A stretch of 64,000 nt of DNA, taken from the IMG/VR virus record IMGVR_UViG_3300044701_003160, positions 62,001 to 126,000 of that record; one strand, 5' to 3'. Below, piece by piece: positions 37,774 through 55,624 of the stretch. A program made the translations under genes and the position numbers. The notes beneath the pieces were generated by a model. That model worked only from the letters and a program-made list of their open reading frames with translations, had not been told where the DNA came from and did not search any database. How positions within the stretch are numbered: the stretch's first letter is position 1; each line of letters opens with the position of its first letter.

Positions 37774-37802
37774 AGTATAGTCGGTAACTTCAGTCTTGTC
37801 AA
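37774..37802 (-). promoter_or_regulatory. Porin sigma70-type promoter
   Basis: TTGACA-N17-TATACT. Confidence 0.75.
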
Positions 37803-38593
37803 GTGCTTTGTTGAGAAGATGATTCCGATACTCTACCAAGGTATGGATTATACTCTGTAATTTGATCTATTGTCAATTCAGAACCTTTTTGAGACCAGAA
37901 CCCAAGTATTGCATCGTGACTATTTTTATGAAAAACATCTATATGTTCAGGATGAATTGAAGAACCAAGTTCAATCTTATAAAGGAATAACGGAGTTGCA
38001 TAAGTTACTCCTGAATTGTAAATCAAATCATCAGCAACTGGTCTTGGTTTAACTCCATTATCCAGTTTATACTTATCTCCACGAATATGATTCCTAATAA
38101 GTTTTTCTGCATGATGCCTAGTAATTACATAACAAGCAGTTGAAAAATCATTTACAAATCTTGTATGAACTGGAACATGAATATCTCCAGTACAAATGAT
38201 TGCAAGTTGAATTACATCCCAAGCATAAGGAGCTCTTGCAATAAAATCCTGCCAAGCAAAATTCCAATATCTTGCAATATCAATATTGCAATCATCTTCC
38301 ATAATAATTGCATAAGGACTATCAGAAGTCTCATACCAGTATTTGATTGCCTTAAGATGAGATGTTACACAACCAATTTCACCAGAGCTCATCATATCAG
38401 GATACTTACCTTTGATAATACCACTTAGATCATCTTCACGACCATCATATGCAGAGATACGTGTATAATTTTCAAGTTCCCAATACTTAAATTGATCCTC
38501 CATATATTGTTTTCTTTCTGGTTGTCCGTCCAGATTGAGATAATATATTGGACCAAAGTTTTTAAGTTTATATACTGATTTATTTTTATCCAT
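37799..38593 (-). CDS. Glycosyltransferase family 25-like
   Basis: YYLNLD...ER...RISAYDG...GEIGC..SHL.A...IMEDD. Confidence 0.85.
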   Translation of the reverse strand: MDKNKSVYKLKNFGPIYYLNLDGQPERKQYMEDQFKYWELENYTRISAYDGREDDLSGIIKGKYPDMMSSGEIGCVTSHLKAIKYWYETSDSPYAIIMEDDCNIDIARYWNFAWQDFIARAPYAWDVIQLAIICTGDIHVPVHTRFVNDFSTACYVITRHHAEKLIRNHIRGDKYKLDNGVKPRPVADDLIYNSGVTYATPLFLYKIELGSSIHPEHIDVFHKNSHDAILGFWSQKGSELTIDQITEYNPYLGRVSESSSQQST

Positions 38594-39530
38594 CGATAAC
38601 TTGCTGAATATTTGGCAGATAGTAATTTTCTAACATTCTACACCATTCAAACTCTTTTGCATAGTTAATAATTTCTTGACGATTGTTTATGGAATATTTT
38701 CTATTTTCAGATATAACATTTTCTACAAATTTTATATCATTAATTTTTTCTTCAGGTATAACACTAATAAATTTATTATTTAAATCCAAATTAGCAGTTG
38801 CCCATTCACTTACAACAACACCAAGGCCCGCAGAAAATGCTTCAAGACAAACTAATGGATGTGCCTCACCATCAGAAAGTAAGATAAGATTTGCATATTG
38901 AGTTAATTTTTTATGAACATCATCTTTAGACCATTCGCCAAGATAATTTTTTTTAACATCAAATCTAGCGTCAGCAATATTTCCAGCATACCAAACAGAT
39001 TCAATATCCTGAAAAAGAAATTGACGTTTTCTATAATCTATTTTTGCAAGATAGATTGATCTATCAGGATAAGTTGGTTTATCGGTTATTTCAAATAATT
39101 TACAGTTAACTCCATTTGGATTTAAATAGAGTCTTTCATCTGGAATATCAGCAAGGTCTTTATAAATTTTATTAATTCCTACAGACAACCCAAAGACATT
39201 TGGTTTAATTCTAGAGAAATGATCAAATACTCTTTCCTTATAACCACCCATTAATTCGGGTCGTTCAATATAAGCAAAGTGCGTAGTGACTGCACAAGGA
39301 TACTGAATAAATTCATAGATTGGAACCCAATCATCATAATTAATATGAACAAAATCAGGACGAAATTGGTTAATCATATTGATAATTTGATAGGGATCAC
39401 CAATATTAATAATTTGAACTTCATGACCCATTTCTTCTAAGGTCATTTTCATATCCCAAATTAAACTTTCAACAGCACCCCACCCAATTGGAGGAATAGG
39501 AAGTGCTGGTCCAATAATACTAATTCGCAT
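38586..39530 (-). CDS. GT-B (GT4-like) glycosyltransferase
   Basis: PIPPIGWGAVES; PNGV; SDGEAHPLVCLEAFSAGLGVV. Confidence 0.8.
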   Translation of the reverse strand: MRISIIGPALPIPPIGWGAVESLIWDMKMTLEEMGHEVQIINIGDPYQIINMINQFRPDFVHINYDDWVPIYEFIQYPCAVTTHFAYIERPELMGGYKERVFDHFSRIKPNVFGLSVGINKIYKDLADIPDERLYLNPNGVNCKLFEITDKPTYPDRSIYLAKIDYRKRQFLFQDIESVWYAGNIADARFDVKKNYLGEWSKDDVHKKLTQYANLILLSDGEAHPLVCLEAFSAGLGVVVSEWATANLDLNNKFISVIPEEKINDIKFVENVISENRKYSINNRQEIINYAKEFEWCRMLENYYLPNIQQVIDG

Positions 39531-40497
39531 TTGCTTCTAATTTTTCAATATTTTCAGCATATAATTTTACAAGACTTTCCCAAGAAAAATTATCAATTGC
39601 AAATTCACGAATTTCATCTCTCATACTCACAGATATCTCACGATTTTCTTTAATCTTTTCCTCAACATAAGAAATATCTTCAAGTTTATCATCAGGAATT
39701 ACTGTTACAAATGGTAACCCTTCTGGGAGATCATGTGCAGCATATTTTGAAATTACCACACCTAGTCCATTTACCATTGCTTCTTTCACAACCAAAGGCG
39801 TTCCATTTTCTCCATCAGAAAGAAGAACGAGATTACCATAATCAGTAAAATGTTCTCTCTTATATTCGTCACTCCATTCTCCAAGATAATTAATACTTGG
39901 GTCAAATGCGGTGGCACCAGTATTTTGCCCGACATAATCAATCGAATCAATTGATTGATACAACCATTGTTTTTTTCTATGATAAATTTGACCCAAATAC
40001 AGAGAACGATCTGGTTTTACTGCATCGGTTCGATAAGTAAATCTCTTATGATTTGCACCATTTTCAGAAAGAAGTAATCTACTTTCATCAGCACCTGCGT
40101 TTTTAAATGTATTAAAATCTTTTTTGGAGATGCAGAAGATATAATATTTTTTATTATTAATAATCCAATCAAAAGTGCGATCATAACCATCGCGGCGGTG
40201 CATATGTGGTTGATCAATATATGGATAATGACTACTAATAGCTAATTTTGAAATATTAGTTTCTTCGGATATCATATCCATAATTGGATGGAATACATCA
40301 TAATGAAGATGAGCGAATTCATAATTATCTTCATTCAAATATTTAATAATTTCATCCCAATTAGGAGTATTAATAATAGTACCTTCATGACCCAACTCAT
40401 CAAGTTCTAGTGCATAGTCCCAAATTAAACTTTCGACAGCACCCCAACCATCAGGAGGAATAGGCATAATCCCAGGGCCAATCAACGCTAATTTCAT
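39520..40497 (-). CDS. GT-B (GT4-like) glycosyltransferase, paralog of neighbour
   Basis: PIPPDGWGAVES; ENGTPLVVKEAMVNGLGVV; FSWE. Confidence 0.8.
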   Translation of the reverse strand: MKLALIGPGIMPIPPDGWGAVESLIWDYALELDELGHEGTIINTPNWDEIIKYLNEDNYEFAHLHYDVFHPIMDMISEETNISKLAISSHYPYIDQPHMHRRDGYDRTFDWIINNKKYYIFCISKKDFNTFKNAGADESRLLLSENGANHKRFTYRTDAVKPDRSLYLGQIYHRKKQWLYQSIDSIDYVGQNTGATAFDPSINYLGEWSDEYKREHFTDYGNLVLLSDGENGTPLVVKEAMVNGLGVVISKYAAHDLPEGLPFVTVIPDDKLEDISYVEEKIKENREISVSMRDEIREFAIDNFSWESLVKLYAENIEKLEANAN

Positions 40498-41270
40498 CAG
40501 TAAAGCTCCTTATACGCATGAACAAGTGCAAAGTCAGTATTACGAAAATTTGGAGTTTTCCAAACTTCTGTTAAATTGGTATTAATTGAATATTCTTTAC
40601 CCAAAATAAAATATACAATTTGCATATACAAGTCTAACCAACCAAATCTATAATCAAGAAATTTTAAAATATAATCAAAATCATAATCAATAAAATCATA
40701 AATTGTATGATAATTATCAAGAAATGTATTGATATTGTATATACTACCACCACCAGCACCATACCAGTCCACGTTAGGATTGGCATTGTATTTTGCTTTA
40801 ATATACTGAAGTAGACTTGGTTCTATTTTATTTCCTGGAACATCAAATCCTGCACATTCCCAAGTAGGATCAATCTTAACCTCTTTTTGAGTTAAAACAT
40901 CATCTTCCATCATAATCATATGACTTCCTCCCTGAGATTTCACATATCTTGCTGCTTCTCTAAACATATGAATCCAATGAAGACTCTCATCTTTAGTAAA
41001 TCCATAAACTCCTGATGGGTGTCCAGAATTTCTACGTCCAATTCTCATATAAGAATGAACGTAATTACAATTATATTTTTCAGCAAGATCAGAATAATCT
41101 ACTCCACCATCACAACAAATAGTATATGGTTCATTCGGATGAAATTTTCTAAATTCTTGAAGAATAAATTCTGTAGCTCTCTTATTTTCATAGACGGTAT
41201 GAAAACAACCAAATTTTGTACTCATGAATCTTTCAAATAATGTGGATGAATGTCGTCGCGATATAACCAA
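40497..41270 (-). CDS. Putative GT-A glycosyltransferase
   Basis: ICCDGG...MMEDDV; in glycan cluster. Confidence 0.55.
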   Translation of the reverse strand: MVISRRHSSTLFERFMSTKFGCFHTVYENKRATEFILQEFRKFHPNEPYTICCDGGVDYSDLAEKYNCNYVHSYMRIGRRNSGHPSGVYGFTKDESLHWIHMFREAARYVKSQGGSHMIMMEDDVLTQKEVKIDPTWECAGFDVPGNKIEPSLLQYIKAKYNANPNVDWYGAGGGSIYNINTFLDNYHTIYDFIDYDFDYILKFLDYRFGWLDLYMQIVYFILGKEYSINTNLTEVWKTPNFRNTDFALVHAYKELY

Positions 41271-41986
41271 AACCAGTGAGGTTCTCCTGGTGGAGTAGGT
41301 TGTACATCAGGTATCATATCTTTGAAGTCGTAACTAAAAGGTGGATTATAAAAACTAAAAACAGATGGGTCTTTCATACCTATCCATTTTTCAAAATTCA
41401 TTCTTTCAATAGGCCCAAAGTCTTGCGATTCTCTTTGAAATGCCTGTTTAGTTGGATGTTGAAGGGTTGAAATATAATCTGCTCTTGCCCACCAAAAATT
41501 GCCACTCATATGTGGCCATGGATCTAGGCAATAATTAACTCCAGATACTTGATAGTGATCTAGTTTATCTAGATTTTCTTTCCATTTGTCAATACAACCC
41601 CACTCCATGAGGTGTCTCCAACTATTTATTGCCCTCACTTTACGATCAGAGTAATGATCTCGCACACCACACATATGACTAATACCTTTAGTGTGAAAGT
41701 ACATTACCTTATGGGCCCGATCATTTACACAATCTTCATAAAGATGCTTAAGTGTAAATCCTTCATACTCATCATCATTGTCCCTACAATCAATGATATC
41801 AATCCAGTCATACAAAGAAACAAATTGTTTAATCCTAGAAGCTTGTGGTCCATTGATAGCACATTTTATGGTTGCAATATCAGTTAACCCACTTCTATAA
41901 AGTCTTTTTATTTGCTCATCAATTAAAATTTTCCACAAGTCAGTATCCGCAGGAGACCAAATGTGATAATAAATATTAACTCTCAT
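41222..41986 (-). CDS. Putative glycan-modifying protein
   Basis: YEGFTL...MYFHTKG...HMSGNFWWARADYI...EKWIG; in glycan cluster. Confidence 0.5.
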   Translation of the reverse strand: MRVNIYYHIWSPADTDLWKILIDEQIKRLYRSGLTDIATIKCAINGPQASRIKQFVSLYDWIDIIDCRDNDDEYEGFTLKHLYEDCVNDRAHKVMYFHTKGISHMCGVRDHYSDRKVRAINSWRHLMEWGCIDKWKENLDKLDHYQVSGVNYCLDPWPHMSGNFWWARADYISTLQHPTKQAFQRESQDFGPIERMNFEKWIGMKDPSVFSFYNPPFSYDFKDMIPDVQPTPPGEPHWFWLYRDDIHPHYLKDS

Positions 41987-41987
41987 A

Positions 41988-42719
41988 TTACCATTGATTA
42001 TTGTCTAGTGATTTATTGTCCTTAGCAAGATGAACCATTTTTTTCTCAAAATTACAATACTGCTCAAATAACTGAGGATATGCAAAAGAAGGGGACAAAG
42101 TATGTACTTCATCTTTATGAGATAAAAACCAACGATTCATATAACTCTCTTCATAATATCTCGCTTGAATACTTTTGTCAAGATCATCCTTAGTCCATTT
42201 ATCTATTTGCTCCATCATATCAAATATTGCAGGAACTTTTCCTCCCCACAAACATCCTTGATAGTACACAGACATATTCATAATATCTTCATCAATACAA
42301 GAGTTGGACAGTGGATTTACGTCGAAAGATCCTGGATATTGATTGTGGGGAGGGAATTCAAGAAAGTGACAAGGATGATGAACTCCAAAATATTTTTTTG
42401 TATCATCAAAAAATTCAGAGTAATTTATATCACACCAAGCATAAAGATCTGCATCAACAGAAATTAACCAGTCATAACCAACTACTTTATTCTTTAACTT
42501 TAACATTTCTTCAAAAGTTTTATGATAGGTAGTCGGAAATCCATAATGAGGTATTTCTATTTTGACTATATTGTCAGGTGATCCTTCCAAATCACCATCA
42601 GTAAAAACAAAATAAGTTTTCTCAATATCAGGTACAAAATAAGTTTCAAGTCTTTCATACCATTTAGGAAGAAACTCAATATATTTTTGTGTGCCCCAAA
42701 AAGTTACTGCAATTTTCAT
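41988..42719 (-). CDS. Glycosyltransferase family 6
   Basis: KIAV...KY..F...YFVFTD...VDAD...VHHP...YYQG.LWGG...EESYMN. Confidence 0.85.
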   Translation of the reverse strand: MKIAVTFWGTQKYIEFLPKWYERLETYFVPDIEKTYFVFTDGDLEGSPDNIVKIEIPHYGFPTTYHKTFEEMLKLKNKVVGYDWLISVDADLYAWCDINYSEFFDDTKKYFGVHHPCHFLEFPPHNQYPGSFDVNPLSNSCIDEDIMNMSVYYQGCLWGGKVPAIFDMMEQIDKWTKDDLDKSIQARYYEESYMNRWFLSHKDEVHTLSPSFAYPQLFEQYCNFEKKMVHLAKDNKSLDNNQW

Positions 42720-43501
42720 TTTAAAATATGCTGTGGTTGCCAATCAAAATACTTTCTAACTTTAGAATTTTCAATATGCAAATATGTTTTTTCTGCCTTT
42801 TGATTCAGTTTAAGGTTTAATGTGCCACGTTTTGACACAATATCTATTATATCAAGAATAGTTATACTTTGCCTTCCAACCAAAAATAATTCATGTTGCT
42901 TATTTAAATCAGTAGATACTACCTTGAATAAAAGATTAACAAAATCATCAATATGAACTAGATCTATTCTTGTTTTGAGATTTGCAAAAATTTCCACAAT
43001 TTGATTGGTATTCACAGAGTTTAAAAGTTTATCAACTAATCCATTAACTCTATCTTTTTTTACCTTTGCTCCCCAAATATTCGATGTCCTAAGAACAACT
43101 GTATTGCAACTAAGTTCTTTTAACATATTTTCAACATGCAACTTACATTCACCATATAAAGAATGTGGAGAGGGCTCAAATTCTTCAAATACTGTTCTTT
43201 CCTTCCCAAGATGCAAATCTCCAGCAGATGAAACAAAAATTATTTTTCCATTTGGATTTTTATTTACGTAGTAATCAAATAGAGTTTTACTATTTGACAC
43301 ATCATTTTTTATAACTTTTTGAAATTCATCATAATTATTTCTAGTAGTAGAAGACCAGGCAAGATGAATTAAACAAGATTCTTCATGACAATCAAAAATA
43401 TCAGAAACTTCATCTCGATAAGAAATTGTCGTAACTTTTTTATCACAAAGTTCCAAAAATCTACTACCAATTAATCCACTAGAGCCACTAAGATATATCA
43501 T
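42716..43501 (-). CDS. NAD-dependent epimerase/dehydratase
   Basis: GSSGLIG; IHLAW; FVSSAG; YGECK. Confidence 0.85.
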   Translation of the reverse strand: MIYLSGSSGLIGSRFLELCDKKVTTISYRDEVSDIFDCHEESCLIHLAWSSTTRNNYDEFQKVIKNDVSNSKTLFDYYVNKNPNGKIIFVSSAGDLHLGKERTVFEEFEPSPHSLYGECKLHVENMLKELSCNTVVLRTSNIWGAKVKKDRVNGLVDKLLNSVNTNQIVEIFANLKTRIDLVHIDDFVNLLFKVVSTDLNKQHELFLVGRQSITILDIIDIVSKRGTLNLKLNQKAEKTYLHIENSKVRKYFDWQPQHILK

Positions 43502-44319
43502 TTAATTATTATCCATTCTTTTGGAATTAAATCAGACGTATCTAAATGTGCATTATTTTTCCCAAACCATTTTTGGGGGTCAGGAGCACAAACCGTTTTA
43601 TTAATACTTTTAGATAACCAAGCACCCCACCAAGAAAAAGTGGAGTTTGCAATAATAAAGTCAGTACACAAATTCATTAAACAAAGATCAGTATAACTAT
43701 CGTTTCCTTCCGATACAAGAAACCTGTCAGATTCAAATAAAGATTGTTCTTTACACCATTCAGGATCATCCGAAAAGATAATCACAATTCTATCATTATC
43801 AAACTTTTGTAGAGCGGCATCATAATAATCAAGACCAAGATTTGTGTGATTTGCAGAATTAATTAAAAAATCTCCACGACGAACGTGAAGTGCAATTGGT
43901 CTATCAACTTCACTCATTTTATGTTTACAAAGAAATGAGATTTCGTTTTTGAATGTAAAATCTTGGCGGATTTCATCTTCAATATGCTTGAAGTATTTTT
44001 CTGTTTGAAAATATCCTTGAAGATTAACCCAATCTGGACAATCATCAAAAAGTTTTTTGTCAAAATTAAAATTATCTTCAACAATAGTTGGTCTATCTTG
44101 GTCTATTACTTGAATGTTTAATTGAGTAACATTTGACATTAAAAATGTATCAAAAAGTTCAATTCTAAGTTTATTCTCAAAACTATCAATAACAACTTCA
44201 TTATGATAAGGAATACAAAAATTATATCCTCTATTTTTAGCAATTCCGCGAAGAGAGGCATATTGGAACATTTGATTTCCAAGTTGACCCATTTTTCCCA
44301 AATAATTAAATCCTATCAT
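43498..44319 (-). CDS. Alpha-1,2-fucosyltransferase (GT11)
   Basis: GQLGNQMFQYA; GYFQTEKYF; HVRRGD; IFSDDP; IANSTFSWWGAWL. Confidence 0.92.
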   Translation of the reverse strand: MIGFNYLGKMGQLGNQMFQYASLRGIAKNRGYNFCIPYHNEVVIDSFENKLRIELFDTFLMSNVTQLNIQVIDQDRPTIVEDNFNFDKKLFDDCPDWVNLQGYFQTEKYFKHIEDEIRQDFTFKNEISFLCKHKMSEVDRPIALHVRRGDFLINSANHTNLGLDYYDAALQKFDNDRIVIIFSDDPEWCKEQSLFESDRFLVSEGNDSYTDLCLMNLCTDFIIANSTFSWWGAWLSKSINKTVCAPDPQKWFGKNNAHLDTSDLIPKEWIIIK

Positions 44320-44331
44320 TTTAAATAATAA

Positions 44332-45099
44332 TTATAAATTTCTAACATACTCTCGTATTGGACTATTGTAATTATACTCCACTCGGTGAATTATGTAAAT
44401 CTCTTCCTTAGATTGATTGCCAAAATATAAATGGCATAGAGAACTAATATTCCCGTCTAAAAATTTTTTAATTTCATCAAAATTTTGATAGTTATTGCAA
44501 GAAGAGTTTGTTGGATAATTTTTTATTTTTTTTGCAAATTTTAAAATACAAGAAGGTATTACAACTTCTTCAGGAACCCAACCAGTATTATTATATAAAT
44601 TATTATCATTTTGGATGAAATCAAACATTTTCATAGAAACATTTTTACTACAAGTTAGACCTTCAACTAAATTTTTAACAACGCCTTTAGGAAATTTGGA
44701 TGTAGAATTTTCTATGATTGGAGTAGATTCCCAATGAAATTCGTGCAAACTAATAAATCCATCAGCATCTTTTAAATATTCTTCAATGCCACGTTTAATA
44801 AAAAGCATTTGTGAATAAAAAATCATATGATAGTCAAATTTAATTTTTAGATCATTAACAACATAATTAAAGTTTGAGCAAAGAGGGTGGATAAAACTAC
44901 CACCCTTATATGTAAAAAATCTTTCTGGATTTATATAAACATTTTCTATATTTGAAAATCTGTCTTGATCAAAATCTTCAAATACTTTACTCACATGTAA
45001 GCAAATTACAGGATTTTTAACAAATTTTTTGATGTTAAAAATCATATCCTCCACTATATTATTATCAGTATGAACTAAACAATTAAAAAATATTTTCAT
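44332..45099 (-). CDS. Hypothetical glycan-cluster protein
   Basis: 255-aa AT-rich co-directional ORF. Confidence 0.55.
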   Translation of the reverse strand: MKIFFNCLVHTDNNIVEDMIFNIKKFVKNPVICLHVSKVFEDFDQDRFSNIENVYINPERFFTYKGGSFIHPLCSNFNYVVNDLKIKFDYHMIFYSQMLFIKRGIEEYLKDADGFISLHEFHWESTPIIENSTSKFPKGVVKNLVEGLTCSKNVSMKMFDFIQNDNNLYNNTGWVPEEVVIPSCILKFAKKIKNYPTNSSCNNYQNFDEIKKFLDGNISSLCHLYFGNQSKEEIYIIHRVEYNYNSPIREYVRNL

Positions 45100-45115
45100 A
45101 CAAAATTGTCAGATA

Positions 45116-45769
45116 TCAAATATTAAATTTTTCCTTAATTTCTTCTATAAGATCAGAATTATTTGATGCAACACCAAGCCCAGCAGAATTTGTAAAATTG
45201 ACTTTAGGAACTTCTAATTGAGAAAAGAAAACTCCAACACCATCAGGATTTGAAATAGTATCGTGAAAAATAATTACACCATTTTCTTTCAGGAATGGTG
45301 ACCAAGTATCACAATCATTTTTACAATTTTCATAATCATGAAGTCCATCAATATGTAAAAGATCTATTTCTTTATCCCACTCTTTTGCAACATCATCAAA
45401 ATAACCTTTAATAATTTCAAGATTATCTAACTTTAATTTATTCTTAACATCCAACACAAATTGATAGTCTTCATCTATCCTAATACCATGCTTTGTATTA
45501 TCAAAACAATCAATACCATAAACTTTCCCTTTATTGTTTAGAGACATTAAGAATGAAGAATATCCATAATCAACTCCAAGTTCAACCGTAACTTGAGGAT
45601 CAATTTTTTCAATCAACCAAGATACAAATTCGTTGTGACTCTTTGGAGGAACATTCCATGCGGATGGAATTGCACCCAAAATTTCACTCACATTATCATC
45701 ATCAAGGGAAAGAACATATTCTCTCCAATTATCTCTTTTATTTTCACACCAAGAAAAATTTTCAATCAT
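45116..45769 (-). CDS. Class I SAM-dependent methyltransferase
   Basis: VELGVDYGYS; GIDCF; IDLLHIDGLHDYE...D...W; IFHD. Confidence 0.88.
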   Translation of the reverse strand: MIENFSWCENKRDNWREYVLSLDDDNVSEILGAIPSAWNVPPKSHNEFVSWLIEKIDPQVTVELGVDYGYSSFLMSLNNKGKVYGIDCFDNTKHGIRIDEDYQFVLDVKNKLKLDNLEIIKGYFDDVAKEWDKEIDLLHIDGLHDYENCKNDCDTWSPFLKENGVIIFHDTISNPDGVGVFFSQLEVPKVNFTNSAGLGVASNNSDLIEEIKEKFNI

Positions 45770-46805
45770 TTATTTGCTCCTTAATCCAATTGTAAGTTTT
45801 TTTAATACCTTCTTCAAGACTCTGAGAATAATCCCAACCAAGTTCTTTGCGAATCAAATCATTATTAGAATTACGCCCACGAACACCGAGAGGTCCCTCA
45901 ATATGATTCTTTTCTACTTGTTTGTTAGCAACTTTAGCAGTAGTATCTACAAGTTGATTGATAGTGACCATTTCTTCTGACCCAATATTTATTGGTCCAA
46001 TAAAATCTGAATCCATCATTCTACGGGTTGCTTCGATACATTCGTCAATATACAAGAAGGAACGAGTTTGTAAACCATCTCCCCACACATCGATGGTTCC
46101 ACCTTCCTCTGGAAGATATGCGACTTTACGGCAGATTGCAGCTGGAGATTTTTCTCTTCCACCTTCCCAGGTTCCTTCGGGTCCAAAGATATTATGATAC
46201 CTAACAACCCGAACAGGGATCCCGTAATTACGATGATAAGCGAAAAACAATCGTTCTGAAAAGAGTTTCTCCCATCCATATTCACTATCGGGTGCTGCGG
46301 GATATGCGGATTCTTCACGACAATCAGGATTATCAGGATCTAATTGATTGTGTTCTGGATACATACAAGCAGAACTGGAGTAAAAGATTTTGGTCTTGTT
46401 GACTTCTTTAAAGTCATTCAGTTGTCGCTGTGCCTCAAGAACATTCAGATTAATGGTTGCAGAGTTGTGCATGATGTCTGCATCATTCACACCAGTAAAA
46501 ACGAATCCTGCACCACCCATATCAGCAGCAAACTGATAGATCTCATCAAAAGTATCAATATATCTGGATGGAACAAAATTATAGAAGTTTTGATAAGGAC
46601 CTTTATATTGAAGAACTCTTTCTACAAAGTTAGCATCACGAAGATCTCCAAGAACAAATTCATGTGCTTGGCTCATAGAAAATTCAGGATACTTAAGATC
46701 AACACCACGAACCCAGTATCCTTCGGATCGCAGTCGTTTTACCATATGACTACCAATAAATCCACCAGCACCAAGAACAAGTGCTGTTTTTTTATACTCA
46801 CTCAT
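45762..46805 (-). CDS. NAD-dependent epimerase, GDP-mannose 3,5-epimerase-like
   Basis: GAGGFIG; FAADMGGAGF; YSSSACMYP; YGWEK; KSPAAICRK; WGDG.QTRSF. Confidence 0.88.
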   Translation of the reverse strand: MSEYKKTALVLGAGGFIGSHMVKRLRSEGYWVRGVDLKYPEFSMSQAHEFVLGDLRDANFVERVLQYKGPYQNFYNFVPSRYIDTFDEIYQFAADMGGAGFVFTGVNDADIMHNSATINLNVLEAQRQLNDFKEVNKTKIFYSSSACMYPEHNQLDPDNPDCREESAYPAAPDSEYGWEKLFSERLFFAYHRNYGIPVRVVRYHNIFGPEGTWEGGREKSPAAICRKVAYLPEEGGTIDVWGDGLQTRSFLYIDECIEATRRMMDSDFIGPINIGSEEMVTINQLVDTTAKVANKQVEKNHIEGPLGVRGRNSNNDLIRKELGWDYSQSLEEGIKKTYNWIKEQIND

Positions 46806-46839
46806 AGTTTATTTTCTAAGTTCATTTATATAGTATAGA

Positions 46840-47658
46840 TCAAGTAGATAATATTTGCAATCCCTTTTCGATAGTCATCTCATATGAAAAATTAAAATCT
46901 TTTAATTTTTTATTATTCAAAGTCATGTTTTTAACTTGAATGAATTTTTGATTGTCTGGGAATGCAACATCAATTATTTTACTTTGACTTCCAGTTAATT
47001 CTTTTGCAGTTTCAATAAGTTCACGAAAAGTGAAAGAAGTGCCAGAGGCAATGTTGTAAATCTCATTTACATTACCTTTATCCAAAACTACCTTAATTGC
47101 TCTACAAATATCCTCAACATACATATAATCTTTTAAAAAATTACCACCATCATAAAGTTGAATATCTTTATTTTGTTTGAGAAGATTAATCATGTATCCA
47201 AGAACATTCTTACCTAAAGAAACTGTTTTATCTAATCCATAAACATTCCCAATCCTTAGAATCCTATACTTAACTCCAAAAGTTTCACAAAAAGATATTA
47301 ACAGTTGTTCAGCACATCGTTTGGTGATGGAATAAAACCCAGTAGGATTGCAACAGTCCGTTTCTTTGGCATCTATGACATCATTACCATAAACAAATCC
47401 AGAACTGATAAAATTAAAGACAATATCTTTACTCTTACAATTTTTAAGGACATCAACAAACAAACTCAAGTTAGTATCAATATCAATATGTAAGTCTTTA
47501 AAAACACTTTGATTTGTTGTTGTGCTAATGAAATAAAGAACTTGTTGAGTTTCAAAGTTTCTACTTTCCTTTGGAACTAACACCACATCTTTTGGATAAA
47601 GATTACAGAAAGTCCCACCAATAAATCCTGTTCCACCAAAGACTGATATCTTATTCAT
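46840..47658 (-). CDS. NAD-dependent epimerase/dehydratase
   Basis: GGTGFIG; FISSGFVYG; YSITK; RIGNVYG. Confidence 0.88.
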   Translation of the reverse strand: MNKISVFGGTGFIGGTFCNLYPKDVVLVPKESRNFETQQVLYFISTTTNQSVFKDLHIDIDTNLSLFVDVLKNCKSKDIVFNFISSGFVYGNDVIDAKETDCCNPTGFYSITKRCAEQLLISFCETFGVKYRILRIGNVYGLDKTVSLGKNVLGYMINLLKQNKDIQLYDGGNFLKDYMYVEDICRAIKVVLDKGNVNEIYNIASGTSFTFRELIETAKELTGSQSKIIDVAFPDNQKFIQVKNMTLNNKKLKDFNFSYEMTIEKGLQILST

Positions 47659-48190
47659 ACTTCTCACATTCTTCAAATGAAAGACCTTTCATATCTTTCT
47701 CAGACATAATAGGGTCAAAATAATTTCCCCAGTTGATATTCAAGTCTGGGTCATTCCACATTAAAGTTCTTTCGTGTTCTTTGTATTGATAATCAGTAAC
47801 CTTATAAAGAACCTCTACTCTTTCGGTCAGAGCTTTAAATCCGTGAGCGAATCCTGGGGGAACCCACAATTCAAGTTCTCCTGGGGAAAGTTTGTAAGCA
47901 GTCCATTGTCCGAATGTAGGAGAACTTTTGCGAAGATCAACAATCACATCATAAATTTCTCCAACCAAACAACGGACAATTTTACCCTGAGGATGTTGAA
48001 TCTGATAATGAAGACCTCTTACAACATTCTTTACAGATACTGAATGACAATCCTGAACGAACTTATATGGTCCGATGATTTTTTCAATCTCACGAAGATT
48101 GAAAGACTCTGTAAAAGAACCTCTGTTGTCACAAAAAATATTTGTAGTAATTAAATATGCGTCTTTTAGTTTAGTTCCAATTGCGTTCAT
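47651..48190 (-). CDS. rfbC: dTDP-4-dehydrorhamnose 3,5-epimerase
   Basis: DNRGSFTE; FVQD.HS.S...VRGLHYQ; VDLRK.SPTFGQW; PPGFAHGF. Confidence 0.93.
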   Translation of the reverse strand: MNAIGTKLKDAYLITTNIFCDNRGSFTESFNLREIEKIIGPYKFVQDCHSVSVKNVVRGLHYQIQHPQGKIVRCLVGEIYDVIVDLRKSSPTFGQWTAYKLSPGELELWVPPGFAHGFKALTERVEVLYKVTDYQYKEHERTLMWNDPDLNINWGNYFDPIMSEKDMKGLSFEECEKYE

Positions 48191-49097
48191 ACCAGTTAAT
48201 CGTGTGTTCTAATCCTTGTTCTATAGTAAATCGTGGAGACCATCCTAATTCTTGGCGAATCTTAGTAATATCTGTAGAGTATCTACGGTCGTGCCCTGGC
48301 CTATCATTTACATATTTTATCATACTTTCATCCATATTCATATGACCTAAAATCATATGGACTAGGTTAATATTCTCAATTTCACACTCTCCACCAATAT
48401 TATACTTCTCCCCCACTCTACCGTTCATCCAGACCTGACACAATGCCTCACAGTGGTCTTGAACGTATAGCCAATCACGAACTTGTTTTCCATCGCCATA
48501 AACAGGAACTTTCTTACCTTGCTTGAGATTTGTGATTGCTTTAGGAATCATCTTCTCCACGAACTGCCTAGGTCCGTAGTTGTTAGAGCAGTTTGTAATT
48601 ATTGCTGGAAATCCATACGTGTTGTGATATGCCATTACAAAGTGGTCTGATGCTGCCTTAGAAGCAGAGTATGGGTTGCGTGGAGCATAGTTAGAGTTCT
48701 CTGTAAATTTTCCCTCTTCTATAGACCCATAGATTTCATCAGTAGAGATATGAATAAACTTTTCTACTGCATACTTCAAAGATAGATTTAATAGATTAAC
48801 AGTTCCCGAAATGTTTGTATGAATAAAAGGTGAACAATCTTCTATTGAATTATCCACATGACTTTCTGCAGCCAAGTGAAAAACTACATTTGGTCTATGT
48901 TTTTTAAATATAAAATCACAATTATATTGATCTACAATATCAGTTGTATAAAACTTTACTTGATCGGGAATATTGTTCCAATCAGCAGCATAAGTCAATT
49001 TGTCGATACAAATTACTTCTTCATCAAATGTTTTTACTAAATGATGAAGTAAATTACTACCAATAAATCCTGCACCACCTGTTACTAGAATAGTCAT
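48171..49097 (-). CDS. rfbB: dTDP-glucose 4,6-dehydratase
   Basis: TGGAGFIGS; HLAAESHVD; HISTDE.YG; PYSASKA; NCSNNYGP; DRPGHDRRY. Confidence 0.93.
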   Translation of the reverse strand: MTILVTGGAGFIGSNLLHHLVKTFDEEVICIDKLTYAADWNNIPDQVKFYTTDIVDQYNCDFIFKKHRPNVVFHLAAESHVDNSIEDCSPFIHTNISGTVNLLNLSLKYAVEKFIHISTDEIYGSIEEGKFTENSNYAPRNPYSASKAASDHFVMAYHNTYGFPAIITNCSNNYGPRQFVEKMIPKAITNLKQGKKVPVYGDGKQVRDWLYVQDHCEALCQVWMNGRVGEKYNIGGECEIENINLVHMILGHMNMDESMIKYVNDRPGHDRRYSTDITKIRQELGWSPRFTIEQGLEHTINWYERNWN

Positions 49098-49109
49098 ATT
49101 ATTTTAACT

Positions 49110-49958
49110 TCACATCATATTTTTTAATTGAGAGAATACTTTAGATATTCCCTCTTGTATATTAGTTTTGGGTTGCCACCATTTAATTATAAATGTATCT
49201 GGTCGATTTCTTTTGTCTAACTGAACAGTATCCTTTTCTTCTGATGGAACTACTTTTACACCATGTTTGCCGATTAAATTAAATTGACCCACAATAATTG
49301 AAGCAACATCAATAATCTTAGTTGAATTAAAACTTGTAATGTGAAGTTTATCTTCTGGACGAAACTCATTATAGTTTAACATAATTGTTTCTAATGCCTC
49401 GCAACAATCTTCAGCATATAAAAACTCTCTTTCTTCTTGACCATCAGTAAGCATATCAATTACGCCAGTCTCAAAACCTTTTTTAATAAAATCACTAATT
49501 ACGTGAGACTTTTCTAGATCACTCTCAATTCCATAAACATTCCAGAAATGAACAGTAAGACCTTGAAGGGTTTGGGTATAAAGTTCTCCTACTCGTTTCA
49601 TTACACCATAAGGAGAATAACTCATATTACTCATTTGAGATGAAGCAAACACGAATTTCTTTTTATACTTCTCAAGTAGTTCAAAAACATTCACCATCAA
49701 TCTTGCATTATTATTAATAAAGTCAAATGTGTGTTGATATTTTTTAAGGTAGCGAGATCCACCAACATCAAATGCAAGGAAGAATACAAAATCTGCATCC
49801 TCAATTACTTTATTAAGCTCCAGATTAGGAATAATTCTCATATCCTGATGTTCACCGTTTAAAATATCAAACTCATGAACTTGATGATTTTTATTGCGAA
49901 AATATTCAGTTAGATATTTTCCTATTTGTCCCGATGACCCTAAAATAGTAATCTTCAT
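49110..49958 (-). CDS. NAD-dependent epimerase/dehydratase
   Basis: GSSGQIG; FASSQMS; YGVMK; GQEEREFLYAED. Confidence 0.85.
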   Translation of the reverse strand: MKITILGSSGQIGKYLTEYFRNKNHQVHEFDILNGEHQDMRIIPNLELNKVIEDADFVFFLAFDVGGSRYLKKYQHTFDFINNNARLMVNVFELLEKYKKKFVFASSQMSNMSYSPYGVMKRVGELYTQTLQGLTVHFWNVYGIESDLEKSHVISDFIKKGFETGVIDMLTDGQEEREFLYAEDCCEALETIMLNYNEFRPEDKLHITSFNSTKIIDVASIIVGQFNLIGKHGVKVVPSEEKDTVQLDKRNRPDTFIIKWWQPKTNIQEGISKVFSQLKNMM

Positions 49959-49981
49959 TTATTGAAAGTATTCTCAATATT

Positions 49982-50020
49982 ATTATACAAAAAAAGTAGA
50001 GTTTAGTCAACTCTACTTTT
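49982..50020 (-). terminator. Terminator/promoter cassette heading the glycan operon
   Basis: GTAGAG-ttgactaaa-CTCTAC-T7; TTGACT-N17-TATAAT. Confidence 0.85.
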
Positions 50021-50077
50021 AGATTACACTAATTTTCTAAAAACTACGCGGTAGTAAGTGCCAAGTAACTAGTATAG

Positions 50078-50590
50078 TCACAATTGATCATTTTTAAGTA
50101 AATATTTTTCCAATAATTCTGGAGAATATTGTTGAGGAGTTTCGATAATTTGTTTTTGTTCTCTTTTTTCTTTTTCTAAAAGATAAACACGATTTCGAAT
50201 TTCTGTTGAAGAATATTGGTGCCTTCGCAAATGATAATAAATTTGAATTCCATTATCAATACAATACTGTTTTCCAGTTACTTCGATATGGCGATATTCT
50301 TCACTTAAGAAACGAATGTGAAATGTTTGTGTCTGAATTAAATTTAACAAATCTGCTTCAGTTTCATACACTAAAATTTCATCAACATATTTACATCCTT
50401 GCAGTTGTACATAGCGTTCATAAGCAGACTGCACTGGTTTATTTTTAATTCCGGGTCGGTCTATCGTAGGATCTATTTGAAGTGCGACTTTCAGATAATC
50501 ACATAGTTCCCTTTCCATTCTAAGCATAGTTACATGCCCAGCATGAAATAAATCAAATGAGCTACAATTAAATCCTATTTTCATATACAA
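50078..50590 (-). CDS. Cytidylyltransferase (TagD / glycerol-3-phosphate CT-like)
   Basis: SSFDLFHAGH (HxGH); ER...L..CKYVDE; YSSTEIR. Confidence 0.88.
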   Translation of the reverse strand: MYMKIGFNCSSFDLFHAGHVTMLRMERELCDYLKVALQIDPTIDRPGIKNKPVQSAYERYVQLQGCKYVDEILVYETEADLLNLIQTQTFHIRFLSEEYRHIEVTGKQYCIDNGIQIYYHLRRHQYSSTEIRNRVYLLEKEKREQKQIIETPQQYSPELLEKYLLKNDQL

Positions 50591-50604: not shown

Positions 50605-50643
50605 ATTATACAAAAAAAGGAGAGTTTAGTCAACTCTCCTTTA
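50605..50643 (-). terminator. Second near-identical terminator/promoter cassette
   Basis: GGAGAG-ttgactaaa-CTCTCC-T7; TTGACT-N17-TATAAT. Confidence 0.85.
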
Positions 50644-50649
50644 GGGTCT

Positions 50650-50842
50650 TTTAGGCTCGCCACCAATTCTTTGACTGGAAATTGGAAACCAGGCGGGAGT
50701 AAGATCCCATCCGCACCACCAATCCTTGAGAGAGATTGGAAACTCATAATAGGGTCATATTGACTCCACCAGTACTTTTAGAGTCTCTCCGTGACTAAAG
50801 GGGTTCATCACCGACCAGGGCTAGTTTTAAGTCATACCGGGA
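50650..50842 (-). ncRNA. Structured ~190-nt RNA (manA/wcaG-type cyanophage motif candidate)
   Basis: No ORF; hairpins CCAATC/GATTGG, GCGG/CCGC, CCAATT/AATTGG; UGGUG and UGGCG motifs; lies between tRNA region and glycan genes. Confidence 0.6.
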
Positions 50843-55511: not shown

Positions 55512-55624
55512 ATAAGGAACCTCCCTGTTTGTGCATCGTTGAGAGGCATAGGAGGTGTGGGATTTATGAGAAGTTTGGACCTCCTCCACCCGTGAAACTA
55601 CTATAAGGCATCAGAGCACTAAAG

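What the first reader, a model, noticed from the sequence alone, without database searches (positions are those of the whole stretch)
37799..50590. 13-kb glycan-building cluster including GT11 plus GT6 (blood-group-like pair)
Seen: GT25, two GT4-like genes, GT6, GT11, a methyltransferase, five SDR-fold epimerase/dehydratases including rfbB, plus rfbC and a cytidylyltransferase; no rfbA or clear rfbD. Known: GT11 makes Fuc-alpha1,2 and GT6 adds alpha1,3-Gal/GalNAc, the pairing behind ABO-like bacterial O-antigens. Inference: the phage builds a defined oligosaccharide to remodel host LPS (exclusion, grazer evasion) or decorate virions. The sigma70 promoter favours host-surface action.
Basis: partly seen in the sequence, partly recalled or inferred. 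Interest (0 to 1): 0.6.

Follow-up and report, generated by a model that had tools for sequence, protein, structure and literature searches.

The report
Cyanophage sugar-chain operon with riboswitch-like leader
A freshwater T4-like cyanophage carries a 13-kb, 16-gene operon for making activated sugars and joining them into a blood-group-like sugar chain; the gene list is real, but such clusters have been known in large cyanophages since 2005 and what they glycosylate is still untested.

Summary
Window 37799-50590 (minus strand) carries 16 tightly packed genes. No RmlA, Gmd or Fcl exists anywhere in the 219-kb phage genome.

New points:
- The 347-aa SDR is a GDP-mannose 3,5-epimerase.
- Two of the unnamed ORFs fold as GT-A glycosyltransferases, and a third has weak GT14 leads. 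That gives 7-8 transferases.
- A wcaG RNA (Rfam, 98 bits), followed by a terminator/sigma70-promoter hairpin, heads the cluster.
- GT11-(SDR)-GT6 is a conserved core in more than 200 viral contigs and many cultured cyanomyoviruses. The sugar-precursor genes upstream are swapped between relatives.
- dN/dS of 0.04-0.31 argues against "stuffer DNA".

All 16 products are soluble. The phage has no initiating transferase, flippase, polymerase or ligase, so it must use host donors and a host or phage acceptor. Remodelling of host envelope glycolipid is the most likely function (about 0.5), and virion glycosylation is the main rival. The cluster is a new member of a known kind (P-SSM2, S-SCSM1, S-SCSM2R, S-SRM01). 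Interest is moderate.

The parts
50649..50747 (-). wcaG RNA motif (RF01761), an orphan riboswitch candidate at the 5' edge of the cluster
   Evidence: Rfam scores 98.1 bits against a gathering score of 42, E 1.6e-17, over the full model. The same RNA heads the cluster in relatives.
50605..50642 (-). Terminator/promoter cassette 1 (PeSL-like): an 11-bp hairpin with TTGACT in its loop, a T-run, then TATAAT
   Evidence: A hairpin plus T-run follows the wcaG RNA in 25 of 25 distinct relatives, and the stem covaries.
50078..50584 (-). Cytidylyltransferase-like nucleotidyltransferase with an HxGH motif. Substrate is unknown. The likely start is the ATG at 50584; the ORF is listed from a TTG at 50590.
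   Evidence: PF01467 46.1 bits. RfaE domain II and TagD models hit below cut-off. phrog_7878 scores 3.4e-28. Best solved relative is ethanolamine-phosphate cytidylyltransferase 3elb, 1.9e-16.
49982..50020 (-). Terminator/promoter cassette 2, with the same 15-nt core as cassette 1. It starts the 15-gene array.
49110..49958 (-). Short extended-SDR (282 aa) with GxxGxxG and YxxxK kept. Candidate NDP-sugar reductase or epimerase.
   Evidence: PF01370 87.3 bits. phrog_540 scores 1.6e-53. Solved relatives are only weak. Motif positions.
48171..49097 (-). RmlB, dTDP-glucose 4,6-dehydratase
   Evidence: TIGR01181 426.7 bits, above its cut-off of 365.1
47651..48190 (-). RmlC, dTDP-4-dehydrorhamnose 3,5-epimerase
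   Evidence: TIGR01221 215.5 bits, above its cut-off of 155.75
46840..47676 (-). Short extended-SDR (278 aa) that overlaps the end of RmlC. It is the best candidate for the 4-keto reductase step (RmlD- or Tll-like).
   Evidence: PF01370 99 bits and RmlD_sub_bind 31.3 bits. TIGR01214 scores only 32 bits against a cut-off of 224. Gene overlap.
45762..46805 (-). [quoted passage not shown]
   Evidence: Arabidopsis GME 2c59 matches at E 5.4e-84, while the next non-GME structure scores 1.6e-24. The SAC, YxxxK and REK catalytic motifs are kept.
45116..45769 (-). Methyltransf_24 class I methyltransferase. Probable sugar O-methyltransferase.
   Evidence: PF13578 76.6 bits. This family is fused or adjacent to DUF8361 elsewhere.
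44332..45099 (-). Unnamed 255-aa ORF, 25% GC. Possible GT14/'Branch'-like transferase, on weak evidence.
   Evidence: No hit in Pfam, NCBIfam or PHROG. It has 171 relatives, one of which hits PF02485. The protein Atlas gives 0.94 to a Branch cluster.
43498..44319 (-). GT11 alpha-1,2-fucosyltransferase family, with HVRRGD at residues 145-150
   Evidence: PF01531 104.8 bits. Homologues occur in 105 phage records. Motif position.
42716..43501 (-). Short extended-SDR (261 aa) wedged between GT11 and GT6. It is conserved there in relatives.
   Evidence: PF01370 71.3 bits. Synteny. dN/dS 0.15-0.21.
41988..42743 (-). GT6 of the DXD (cyanophage/Parachlamydia) clade. The likely start is the ATG at 42719.
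   Evidence: PF03414 50.9 bits and NF041524 3.9e-36. BoGT6a 4ayj matches at 4.4e-11, with DAD aligned to its NAN and EES aligned to its catalytic DES. Conservation.
41222..41986 (-). DUF8361 protein with a GT-A glycosyltransferase-like fold and invariant H..HTKG..SGNFWW motifs
   Evidence: Protein Atlas and PF27674. Model pLDDT 88.9. Best structural matches are GT-A glycosyltransferases at Z 10.5-11.7. dN/dS 0.04-0.05.
40497..41225 (-). Unnamed ORF that folds as a GT-A transferase closest to GT6 enzymes, with an EDD (DXD-type) motif. The ORF is listed from 41270.
   Evidence: Model pLDDT 94.7. Foldseek top hits are BoGT6a, alpha3GalT and GTA/GTB at E 1.5e-8, TM about 0.55. Invariant M-E-D-D-V.
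39520..40497 (-). GT4-like (GT-B) glycosyltransferase, paralogue a
   Evidence: phrog_33732 4e-83. Weak Agl16 hit. No Pfam hit.
38586..39530 (-). GT4-like (GT-B) glycosyltransferase, paralogue b, with an E-x7-E motif
   Evidence: phrog_33732 7.6e-150. Glyco_transf_4 and Glycos_transf_1 both hit below cut-off. No solved relative by sequence.
37799..38593 (-). GT25 (LOS/LPS beta-1,4-galactosyltransferase family), the last gene of the array
   Evidence: PF01755 47.8 bits. phrog_2835 5.2e-125.

Best explanation
This is the 'cell-surface glycan' cassette of a freshwater T4-like cyanomyovirus. It lies in the hyperplastic region between the tRNA cluster and the porin-pstS genes.

A wcaG RNA with its own terminator hairpin marks the 5' edge. 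A sigma70-type promoter built into that hairpin, and a second copy 620 nt downstream, drives an operon-like array that is probably expressed early.

The upstream half diverts host nucleotide sugars. RmlB, RmlC and a short SDR turn host dTDP-glucose into a 6-deoxy-L-hexose such as L-rhamnose or 6-deoxy-L-talose. The epimerase turns host GDP-mannose into GDP-L-galactose or GDP-L-gulose. The cytidylyltransferase-like enzyme activates a further, unknown phosphate ester.

The downstream half is a conserved block of 7-8 soluble glycosyltransferases plus a methyltransferase, which assemble a defined hetero-oligosaccharide. Its constant core is GT11 followed by a DXD-type GT6. That predicts an L-Fuc (or L-Gal)-alpha1,2-Gal unit capped by an alpha1,3-hexose, which is an ABH-like motif.

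The phage supplies no initiating, flipping, polymerising or ligating enzyme. The chain must therefore be built on an acceptor that already sits at the cytoplasmic face. The most likely acceptor is a host lipid-linked LPS core or O-unit intermediate, which the host then exports. This would change the surface of the infected cell. The expected benefits are less superinfection, less loss of progeny on infected cells and debris, or altered recognition by grazers.

Shown: gene content, motifs, folds, synteny, purifying selection, and the RNA and promoter elements. Inferred: donors, linkages, acceptor, timing of expression and benefit.
For: -
- The genes are tightly packed.
- All 16 products lack hydrophobic helices.
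- The genome lacks NTP_transferase, Gmd, Bac_transf, Glycos_transf_4, Wzy_C and GT2. No multi-pass membrane ORF of that kind was found.
- The block GT11-SDR-GT6-DUF8361-GT-A-GT4-GT4-GT25 is conserved in 9 distinct IMG/VR contigs at 57-92% aa identity, while the precursor genes are swapped.
- GT11 lies upstream of GT6 in 72 of 76 loci and in Bellamy, S-CAM9, S-PRM1 and S-8S53/55/56.
- dN/dS is 0.04-0.31.
- The cluster is identical in two further contigs from other metagenomes and is present in two studies' runs.
- The bacterial members of GT11, GT6, GT25 and GT4 that have been characterised act on LPS, LOS or O-units (established knowledge). PaGT6 needs Fuc-alpha1,2-Gal (PMC3516806).
- The neighbouring genes are envelope-directed: an SLH-OprB porin and PstS. 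The relative S-SRM01 carries a lipid-A gene, annotated as UDP-2,3-diacylglucosamine diphosphatase, near its own cluster.
- No late-type TATAAATA promoter lies in the array.
Against: - There is no expression data; no RNA run holds the locus.
- No acceptor is identified.
- Nothing distinguishes a lipid acceptor from a protein acceptor.
- The GT11 donor is uncertain. There is no phage GDP-fucose pathway, and a GME orthologue lies near GT11 in only 11 of 55 related loci.
- The GT6 donor pocket (Q-G-C) matches no characterised enzyme.
- The short SDRs and the cytidylyltransferase have no assigned substrate.
- LPS remodelling by a strictly lytic phage has little experimental precedent.
- Relatives of the 255-aa ORF are common in giant viruses, which glycosylate their virions.
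Confidence: 0.5

Rival explanations
1. Virion glycosylation. The enzymes decorate phage structural proteins (capsid, tail or fibres) in the cytoplasm before assembly, as in chloroviruses, mimiviruses and some mycobacteriophages. The glycan would shield virions from proteases, grazers or non-productive adsorption.
For: - All enzymes are soluble and cytoplasmic, and no lipid-carrier machinery is encoded. A protein acceptor needs none.
- The combination of deoxyhexose synthesis, a fucosyl-type transferase and a methyltransferase resembles giant-virus capsid glycan machinery (established knowledge).
- Relatives of the 255-aa ORF are frequent in Nucleocytoviricota.
- A distant unk257 homologue sits in another T4-like phage next to GT2 and methyltransferase genes.
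- DUF8361 and Methyltransf_24 genes lie beside discoidin-domain proteins in a cellular genome.
Against: - The promoters are sigma70/early type and no late-type promoter lies in the array, whereas virion genes are late.
- The cluster lies among host-directed auxiliary genes, not in the structural module.
- The bacterial members of GT6, GT11 and GT25 that have been characterised act on lipid-linked glycans.
- No cyanophage virion glycan has been reported in the papers read.
Confidence: 0.25
2. Another envelope or cytoplasmic target. The cluster glycosylates host or phage-encoded envelope proteins (for example the co-located SLH-OprB porin, pili or an S-layer) or peptidoglycan-linked polysaccharide. 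Alternatively it makes a soluble oligosaccharide, rather than acting on LPS.
For: - No terminator separates the porin gene, 88 nt downstream on the same strand, from the array; the first terminator-like hairpin follows the porin.
- The order GT25-porin-PstS is conserved in relatives.
- The acceptor is entirely unassigned.
Against: - The porin has its own strong promoter-like sites.
- Many relatives have the GT block without the porin.
- There is no oligosaccharyltransferase or O-glycosylation enzyme to move a glycan onto periplasmic proteins.
Confidence: 0.12
3. The cluster is passenger or 'stuffer' DNA with no function in the phage, or it serves to glycosylate phage DNA.
For: - Sullivan et al. 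2010 raised the stuffer idea for LPS clusters (PMC3037559).
- The authors of the S-SCSM2R paper suggested that glycosyltransferases might protect phage DNA (PMC12801897).
Against: - dN/dS is 0.04-0.31 with synonymous sites near saturation, ORFs are intact, and catalytic motifs and gene order are conserved.
- The genome has no thymidylate-synthase-family hydroxymethylase to make a glycosylatable base.
- The GT11, GT6 and GT25 families are not known to act on DNA.
Confidence: 0.05

Closest known systems
'LPS' or cell-wall-synthesis-and-modification gene clusters of large T4-like cyanophages: P-SSM2, S-SM2, S-SSM7 (PMC1079782, PMC3037559), S-SCSM1 (PMC9602691), S-SCSM2R (PMC12801897), S-SRM01
   Same: - They sit in the same genomic neighbourhood: nrdAB, tRNAs, then the cluster, then pstS.
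- They hold the same enzyme families: nucleotide-sugar epimerases including GME, RmlB/RmlC, GT11, GT25, GT1/GT4 and methyltransferases.
- The function is hypothetical in all of them.
   Different: - Gene composition differs module by module.
- This phage has GME but no Gmd/Fcl, which S-SCSM1 and S-SRM01 have.
- It carries the 8-gene block with DUF8361 and a second GT6-like GT-A enzyme.
- It appears to be freshwater.
Bacterial histo-blood-group mimicry loci: the E. coli O86 O-antigen genes wbnK (GT11) and wbnI (GT6), Bacteroides ovatus BoGT6a, and Parachlamydia PaGT6 (PMC3516806, PMC3961637)
   Same: - A GT11 is paired with a GT6.
- The phage GT6 aligns over its whole length with BoGT6a and keeps the catalytic Glu.
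- It belongs to the DXD clade typified by the P-SSM2 enzyme and PaGT6, and PaGT6 needs a Fuc-alpha1,2-Gal acceptor.
   Different: - There is no Wzx, Wzy, WecA or WaaL context.
- The phage enzyme lacks the C-terminal membrane-binding domain of the NXN bacterial clade.
- Its donor-pocket residues are Q-G-C, against L-G-G (GTA), M-G-A (GTB), A-G-G (BoGT6a) and C-G-G (Parachlamydia-type).
- Sugars and linkages are untested.
Virus-encoded glycosylation machinery of chloroviruses and mimiviruses, and virion glycosylation in mycobacteriophages
   Same: A virus encodes both nucleotide-sugar tailoring enzymes and several soluble glycosyltransferases plus a methyltransferase.
   Different: Those systems are shown to act on capsid or fibril proteins. 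Here the target is unknown, and the promoter type and genomic neighbourhood point to host-directed genes.
Seroconverting temperate phages (gtrABC, oac and O-antigen polymerase modifiers of Shigella, Salmonella and Pseudomonas phages)
   Same: The proposed benefit is the same: change the host surface glycan to block further phage adsorption.
   Different: Those phages are temperate and use 1-3 membrane enzymes acting on the periplasmic side. This one is a lytic-type T4-like phage with 16 cytoplasmic enzymes.
wcaG RNA motif (RF01761; PMC2864571) and PeSL terminator/promoter cassettes of T4-type phages (PMC2839356, PMC4122927)
   Same: - The RNA matches the full wcaG model and lies upstream of exopolysaccharide-type genes in a T4-like cyanophage.
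- The hairpin carries the -35 box in its loop, followed by a T-run and a -10 box, as described for PeSLs. It occurs at module boundaries.
   Different: - The RNA lies upstream of the promoter, not in the leader that promoter would produce.
- In this phage five genes have been inserted between the RNA and the epimerase gene that it abuts in relatives.
- Neither PeSL paper mentions cyanophages (PMC4122927 searched; PMC2839356 by its abstract only), and a study of cyanophage S-PM2 found only sparse PeSL-like elements (PMC4503421).

Membership tests
CAZy GT6 (DXD clade) | Sequence profile match over the catalytic domain | tested here: met
   PF03414 50.9 bits against a cut-off of 25. NF041524 covers profile positions 1-222 of 226 at 3.9e-36, but its 124.7 bits is below the 250-bit subfamily cut-off. 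BoGT6a and GTA/GTB match at 4e-11 to 1e-8.
CAZy GT6 (DXD clade) | DXD metal-binding motif and catalytic Glu (E303 of GTB, E192 of BoGT6a) | tested here: met
   D97-A-D99 aligns with the N-A-N of BoGT6a, and E199 in 'EES' aligns with its 'DES'. Both are invariant in 7 phage sequences.
CAZy GT6 (DXD clade) | Retaining alpha-1,3 transfer of Gal or GalNAc to a Fuc-alpha1,2-Gal acceptor | not testable with these tools
   Only inferred, from PaGT6 activity (PMC3516806) and the conserved upstream GT11. The donor-pocket residues Q-G-C are unlike any characterised member.
CAZy GT11 (alpha-1,2-fucosyltransferase) | Profile match and the HxRRGD donor-binding motif | tested here: met
   PF01531 104.8 bits against 23.9. 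HVRRGD lies at residues 145-150.
CAZy GT11 (alpha-1,2-fucosyltransferase) | Uses GDP-L-fucose | not testable with these tools
   The phage has no Gmd or Fcl but does have GME. The donor could be host GDP-fucose or phage-made GDP-L-galactose.
dTDP-L-rhamnose pathway (RmlABCD) | RmlA, glucose-1-phosphate thymidylyltransferase | tested here: not met
   No NTP_transferase anywhere in the 219-kb genome
dTDP-L-rhamnose pathway (RmlABCD) | RmlB and RmlC | tested here: met
   Both score above the NCBIfam equivalog cut-offs
dTDP-L-rhamnose pathway (RmlABCD) | RmlD, the 4-reductase | tested here: inconclusive
   Three short SDRs keep the cofactor and YxxxK motifs. The best TIGR01214 score among them is 32 bits against a cut-off of 224. 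The one at 46840-47676 overlaps rmlC.
GDP-L-fucose de novo pathway (Gmd + Fcl) | GDP-mannose 4,6-dehydratase and GDP-fucose synthase | tested here: not met
   The best TIGR01472 hit in the genome is RmlB, at 73 bits against a cut-off of 415. The best Fcl score is 83.8 against 500, and it comes from the GME gene.
GDP-mannose 3,5-epimerase | Close similarity to characterised GME, with the catalytic Cys, Tyr and Lys residues | tested here: met
   2c59 at 5.4e-84 and 8sg0 at 1.6e-83, against 1.6e-24 for the next family. The SSAC (144-147), YGWEK (176-180) and GGREK (215-219) motifs are present. Activity is not tested.
Wzx/Wzy- or ABC-dependent O-antigen gene cluster | Initiating polyprenyl-phosphate transferase, flippase or transporter, and polymerase or ligase | tested here: not met
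   No Bac_transf, Glycos_transf_4 or Wzy_C. No suitable multi-pass membrane ORF exists in the genome. Wzx and ABC-transporter profiles were not searched directly.
wcaG RNA (RF01761) | Covariance-model score above the Rfam gathering threshold, upstream of exopolysaccharide-type genes | tested here: met
   98.1 bits against 42. The RNA is in the same position in 5 other loci by Rfam and in 20 of 55 IMG/VR loci by nhmmer. Ligand and mechanism are unknown.
PeSL (promoter-early stem-loop) cassette | Terminator hairpin carrying a -35 box, followed by a T-run and a -10 box, at the borders of swapped modules | tested here: met
   The sequence features are met twice in the window. A scan for TTGnnn-16..18-TAnnnT hit 20 of 25 wcaG-downstream sequences; about 18 of these place the TTG in the hairpin loop, and the stems covary. 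Promoter and terminator activity and a role in recombination are not tested.
CAZy GT4 (retaining GT-B) | Profile match to the Glyco_transf_4 and Glycos_transf_1 domains | tested here: inconclusive
   Paralogue b hits both domains in the right order, but below cut-off (22.6 against 28.5, and 20.2 against 26.4). Paralogue a has no Pfam hit. The PHROG 'glycosyltransferase' family matches strongly. There is no solved relative by sequence.
CAZy GT25 | Profile match | tested here: met
   PF01755 47.8 bits against 24, but only profile positions 3-98 of 199 are covered. phrog_2835 5.2e-125.

The most novel reading that the evidence does not exclude
The wcaG RNA is a true riboswitch that senses a nucleotide sugar or a related metabolite. 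It gates transcriptional read-through at its invariant terminator into a pan-cyanophage glycan operon. The constant GT11 then DXD-GT6 core of that operon puts an ABH-like cap on the infected cell's surface glycolipid or on the virion. In phages with the epimerase, the cap would be an L-galactose analogue: hexose-alpha1,3-[L-Gal/L-Fuc-alpha1,2]-Gal. Phage-made 'blood-group' epitopes would then be widespread on aquatic picocyanobacteria.
Probability: 0.15. Interest if true: 0.7.

Novelty: new member of a known kind. Interest (0 to 1): 0.4.

Why it matters
Large cyanomyoviruses have been known for twenty years to carry sugar-gene clusters, and nobody has shown what these do. One review even asked whether they are stuffer DNA.

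This locus and its relatives show three things:
- The genes are under strong purifying selection.
- A GT11-GT6 pair is the constant core in hundreds of viral contigs, from both marine and freshwater samples.
- The orphan wcaG RNA, with an invariant terminator, marks the head of the cassette whatever gene comes first.

Together these give concrete tests. They name which enzymes to assay, with which donors, and which cultured phages carry the core. They also suggest candidate ligand classes for an orphan riboswitch.

If host surface remodelling is confirmed, it would affect models of superinfection, phage decay on debris and grazing in picocyanobacterial populations. The locus is not a new kind of system.

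Tried and rejected
- **Obligate GME-GT11 pairing.** I considered that GT11 always uses GDP-L-galactose from the adjacent epimerase. This is weakened: a GME orthologue lies within 6-8 kb in only 11 of 55 related loci, and several phages have wcaG-GT11-GT6 with no GME. S-SRM01 and S-SCSM1 carry Gmd and Fcl (PMC9602691). I kept it only as a minority reading for this phage.
- **DUF8361 as the missing nucleotidyltransferase (an RmlA substitute).** Structure search puts GT-A glycosyltransferases (Z 10.5-11.7) above nucleotidyltransferases (Z 9-10), and there is no G-rich loop. It is not excluded but is less likely.
- **Host origin of GT6.** A genome-contig scan with the GT6 alignment found no cyanobacterial hit. 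The best hit, at 44%, is on a contig of a marine MAG labelled Methanobacteriota, possibly misbinned phage DNA. All others are 24-30%. The scan is pattern-limited, so this is weak evidence of absence. Relatives cannot be drawn for a virus record.
- **Sequence searches of solved structures.** These gave nothing for GT11, GT4b or a profile of the 255-aa ORF family. They gave only weak generic SDR hits for the three short SDRs.
- **Expression.** No RNA run holds the locus. Read laying was not used, because only DNA contigs were on offer.
- **Other gaps.** The 'atlas' fold library was unavailable. Both structure-prediction jobs went to the two block ORFs, so the 255-aa ORF was not folded. Searches failed on wrong coordinates; in the repeat calls (60, 88) the L028 coordinates were corrected and the L015 stretch was dropped.
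- **Search use and genetic code.** No alternative genetic code was used.

Full report
**Setting.** The window is bases 62001-126000 of a 219,018-bp IMG/VR virus record that CheckV rates complete. It is a T4-like cyanomyovirus. The window holds psbA and psbD, nrdA/nrdB, a primase, baseplate and tail-lysozyme genes, an 11-tRNA cluster and pstS. Genome GC is 35.7%, and the cluster genes are 25-39% GC. Public runs that hold the locus nearly completely are labelled freshwater metagenomes, from two studies. None is RNA. The closest cultured phage for the adjacent porin is the freshwater phage S-SRM01.

**Observation check.** Sixteen minus-strand ORFs fill 37799-50590. After the second gene they are packed, with gaps of -28 to +34 nt. 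The assignments, in order of transcription, are:
1. A cytidylyltransferase-like enzyme with an HxGH motif. Its closest solved relatives are ethanolamine-phosphate and glycerol-3-phosphate cytidylyltransferases, and the heptose adenylyltransferase models hit below cut-off.
2. A 282-aa SDR.
3. RmlB, above the NCBIfam equivalog cut-off.
4. RmlC, above the NCBIfam equivalog cut-off.
5. A 278-aa SDR that overlaps the end of rmlC.
6. A 347-aa SDR.
7. A Methyltransf_24 enzyme.
8. An unnamed 255-aa ORF.
9. GT11.
10. A 261-aa SDR.
11. GT6.
12. An unnamed 254-aa ORF.
13. An unnamed ORF of about 242 aa.
14. and 15. Two paralogous GT4-like genes.
16. GT25.

'No rfbA' holds for the whole genome. Likely true starts are 50584 for the first gene, 42719 for GT6 and 41225 for the ORF of about 242 aa.

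(a) The 347-aa SDR is a GDP-mannose 3,5-epimerase homologue.
- It matches the Arabidopsis enzyme at E 5e-84, against 1.6e-24 for the next family.
- It keeps the catalytic Cys, Tyr and Lys motifs.
- The genome has no Gmd or Fcl.

(b) The ORF of about 242 aa gives a confident model (pLDDT 94.7).
- Its best structural matches are GT6 enzymes: BoGT6a, alpha3GalT and GTA/GTB, at Foldseek E 1.5e-8 and TM about 0.55.
- It has an invariant E-D-D motif.

(c) The 254-aa ORF is DUF8361.
- Its model (pLDDT 88.9) is a GT-A fold, and glycosyltransferases are the top matches (Z 10.5-11.7).
- The family is repeatedly fused or adjacent to Methyltransf_24.

(d) The 255-aa ORF has 171 relatives but only two weak leads to GT14/'Branch'.

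(e) A wcaG RNA (RF01761, 98 bits against 42) lies at 50649-50747, just upstream of the first gene.

- The same cassette, with an identical 15-nt core, recurs 620 nt downstream, so the two copies bracket the first gene.
- This is the PeSL architecture described for other T4-type phages (PMC2839356, PMC4122927).

**Comparative anatomy.** GT6 homologues occur in 72 phage records and GT11 homologues in 105, almost all of them cyanophages. In Bellamy the order is nrdA-nrdB, tRNAs, wcaG RNA, GME, GT11, GT6. S-SCSM2R has a different 11-kb transferase cluster at the same position, ending near pstS.

Nine distinct IMG/VR contigs share the 8-gene block GT11-SDR-GT6-DUF8361-GT-A-GT4-GT4-GT25 at 57-92% aa identity. 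Their upstream precursor genes are replaced by other modules:
- a GHMP kinase, an NTP-transferase, dehydratases and an RmlD-like gene in one lineage;
- an HAD phosphatase, a PfkB kinase, an NTP-transferase/RpiB fusion and an FkbM methyltransferase in another.

Two further contigs from other metagenomes carry the whole cluster at about 100% identity.

A wider scan found 215 viral contigs. The figures below come from the best 78 of them. Near-duplicates were not removed, so the counts are not independent.

| Feature | Count |
|---|---|
| GT11 upstream of GT6 | 72 of 76 |
| ...directly abutting | 31 |
| ...with one small gene between | 31 |
| Full downstream block present | 21 of 54 |
| GME orthologue nearby | 11 of 55 |
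| wcaG RNA upstream | 20 of 55 |

The first gene after the wcaG RNA varies: it is GT11, GME, RmlB or the cytidylyltransferase. In this phage five genes lie between the RNA and the epimerase gene that it abuts in Bellamy and three IMG/VR relatives.

A hairpin plus T-run follows the RNA in all 25 distinct sequences, and the stems covary. A scan for TTGnnn-16..18-TAnnnT hit 20 of the 25; in about 18 of them the TTG lies in the hairpin loop.

**Are the genes functional?** Pairwise dN/dS against four relatives is 0.04-0.31 for every block gene, and synonymous sites are near saturation. DUF8361 and the GT6-like GT-A enzyme are the most constrained. Cofactor and catalytic motifs are intact in all five SDRs, GT6, GT11 and GME. 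This argues against the 'stuffer DNA' idea raised in PMC3037559.

**Mechanism.** None of the 16 products has a predicted membrane helix. The genome lacks all of the following:
- sugar-1-phosphate nucleotidyltransferases;
- initiating polyprenyl-phosphate transferases;
- Wzy/WaaL-type proteins;
- GT2 enzymes;
- any suitable multi-pass membrane ORF.

The phage therefore taps host dTDP-glucose, GDP-mannose and UDP-sugars. It also needs an acceptor that is made by the host or is a phage protein.

The characterised DXD-clade GT6 (Parachlamydia PaGT6) transfers GalNAc only to Fuc-alpha1,2-Gal acceptors (PMC3516806). This fits the conserved GT11-then-GT6 order. The phage clade carries Q-G-C at the donor-discriminating positions. 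GalNAc enzymes have Gly and Gal enzymes have Ala at the third of these positions. From this I infer a non-acetylated hexose donor.

Characterised bacterial members of GT11, GT6, GT25 and GT4 act on LPS, LOS or O-unit intermediates at the cytoplasmic face (established knowledge). Three further points bear on the target:
- The promoters are sigma70-type, and the array has no late-type TATAAATA.
- The neighbours are an outer-membrane porin gene and pstS.
- S-SRM01 has a lipid-A gene, annotated as UDP-2,3-diacylglucosamine diphosphatase, near its own cluster.

I therefore favour remodelling of host envelope glycolipid (about 0.5). The rivals are:
- virion glycosylation (about 0.25);
- other envelope or soluble targets (about 0.12);
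- stuffer DNA or DNA modification (about 0.05). The genome has no thymidylate-synthase-family hydroxymethylase.

**Regulation.** The wcaG RNA lies upstream of the hairpin promoter. It is therefore not in the leader that this promoter would produce. Two readings remain: it gates read-through from upstream transcription at its invariant terminator, or it is a separate terminated RNA. This is unresolved.

**Known or new.** Clusters of this kind were described in P-SSM2 in 2005, with the same surface-remodelling hypothesis (PMC1079782). They have since been described in S-SM2/S-SSM7, S-SCSM1, S-SCSM2R and S-SRM01 (PMC3037559, PMC9602691, PMC12801897). The cyanophage DXD GT6 clade and the wcaG RNA are also published (PMC3516806, PMC2864571).

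The locus is a new member of a known kind. This analysis adds the constant GT11-GT6 core, the 8-gene block, the two extra GT-A folds, the modular swapping of precursor genes at terminator/promoter cassettes, and the evidence for purifying selection.

**Limits.** There is no expression data, no biochemistry and no host identification. Neighbourhood counts rest on 78 non-dereplicated loci. Promoter and terminator calls are consensus matches only.

Noticed in passing
window 26819-28947 (-): psbA (D1) is split. The ORF 28027-28947 ends after '...AFNLN'. Two Rfam group I introns follow (27840-28067 and 27491-27723), with a mini-exon between them that encodes the next conserved D1 stretch. An HNH-like ORF lies at 26819-27343. 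S-SRM01 is annotated with a similarly split psbA and homing endonucleases.
   Followed up: partly
window 25696-26757 (-): This ORF is psbD (D2), 31% identical to the D1 ORF. The PHROG label 'photosystem II D1' is generic.
   Followed up: yes
window 36229-37710 (-): A phage-encoded outer-membrane porin with an SLH domain and an OprB barrel ('iron uptake porin' NF033921, 302 bits) lies between the glycan array and pstS. A full-length phage homologue was found only in freshwater S-SRM01 (72%). The order GT25-porin-PstS-redoxin recurs in IMG/VR relatives.
   Followed up: partly
window 28987-29076 (-) and 55519-55555 (-): A PhotoRC-II RNA lies upstream of psbA, and an abiF RNA lies beside tRNA-Arg.
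   Followed up: no
window 50605-50642 and 49982-50020 (-): Two copies of a terminator/promoter hairpin share the same 15-nt core and bracket the cytidylyltransferase-like gene. This suggests the gene is a separately acquired single-gene module.
   Followed up: partly
L111 (contig of GCA_030012865.1) 6576-14980: In a cellular genome, two DUF8361 genes sit beside a Methyltransf_24 protein carrying a discoidin domain and beside GT61-discoidin proteins. Fusions of DUF8361 with Methyltransf_24 also exist (P0119, P0125). The two families look functionally linked.
   Followed up: partly
L015 (contig PCAW01000016.1): The closest 'genomic' GT6 hit (44%) is on a contig of a MAG labelled Methanobacteriota, and its match contains two stop codons. 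It is possibly misbinned phage DNA.
   Followed up: no
G000:C1:9083-10078 (L028 84-1079, -): A sixth extended-SDR gene (331 aa, Epimerase 164.6 bits) lies far from the cluster, outside the window.
   Followed up: partly
window 33131-33835 and 32655-33128 (-): A Peptidase_C39-like cysteine protease ORF lies next to a lysozyme-family ORF.
   Followed up: no
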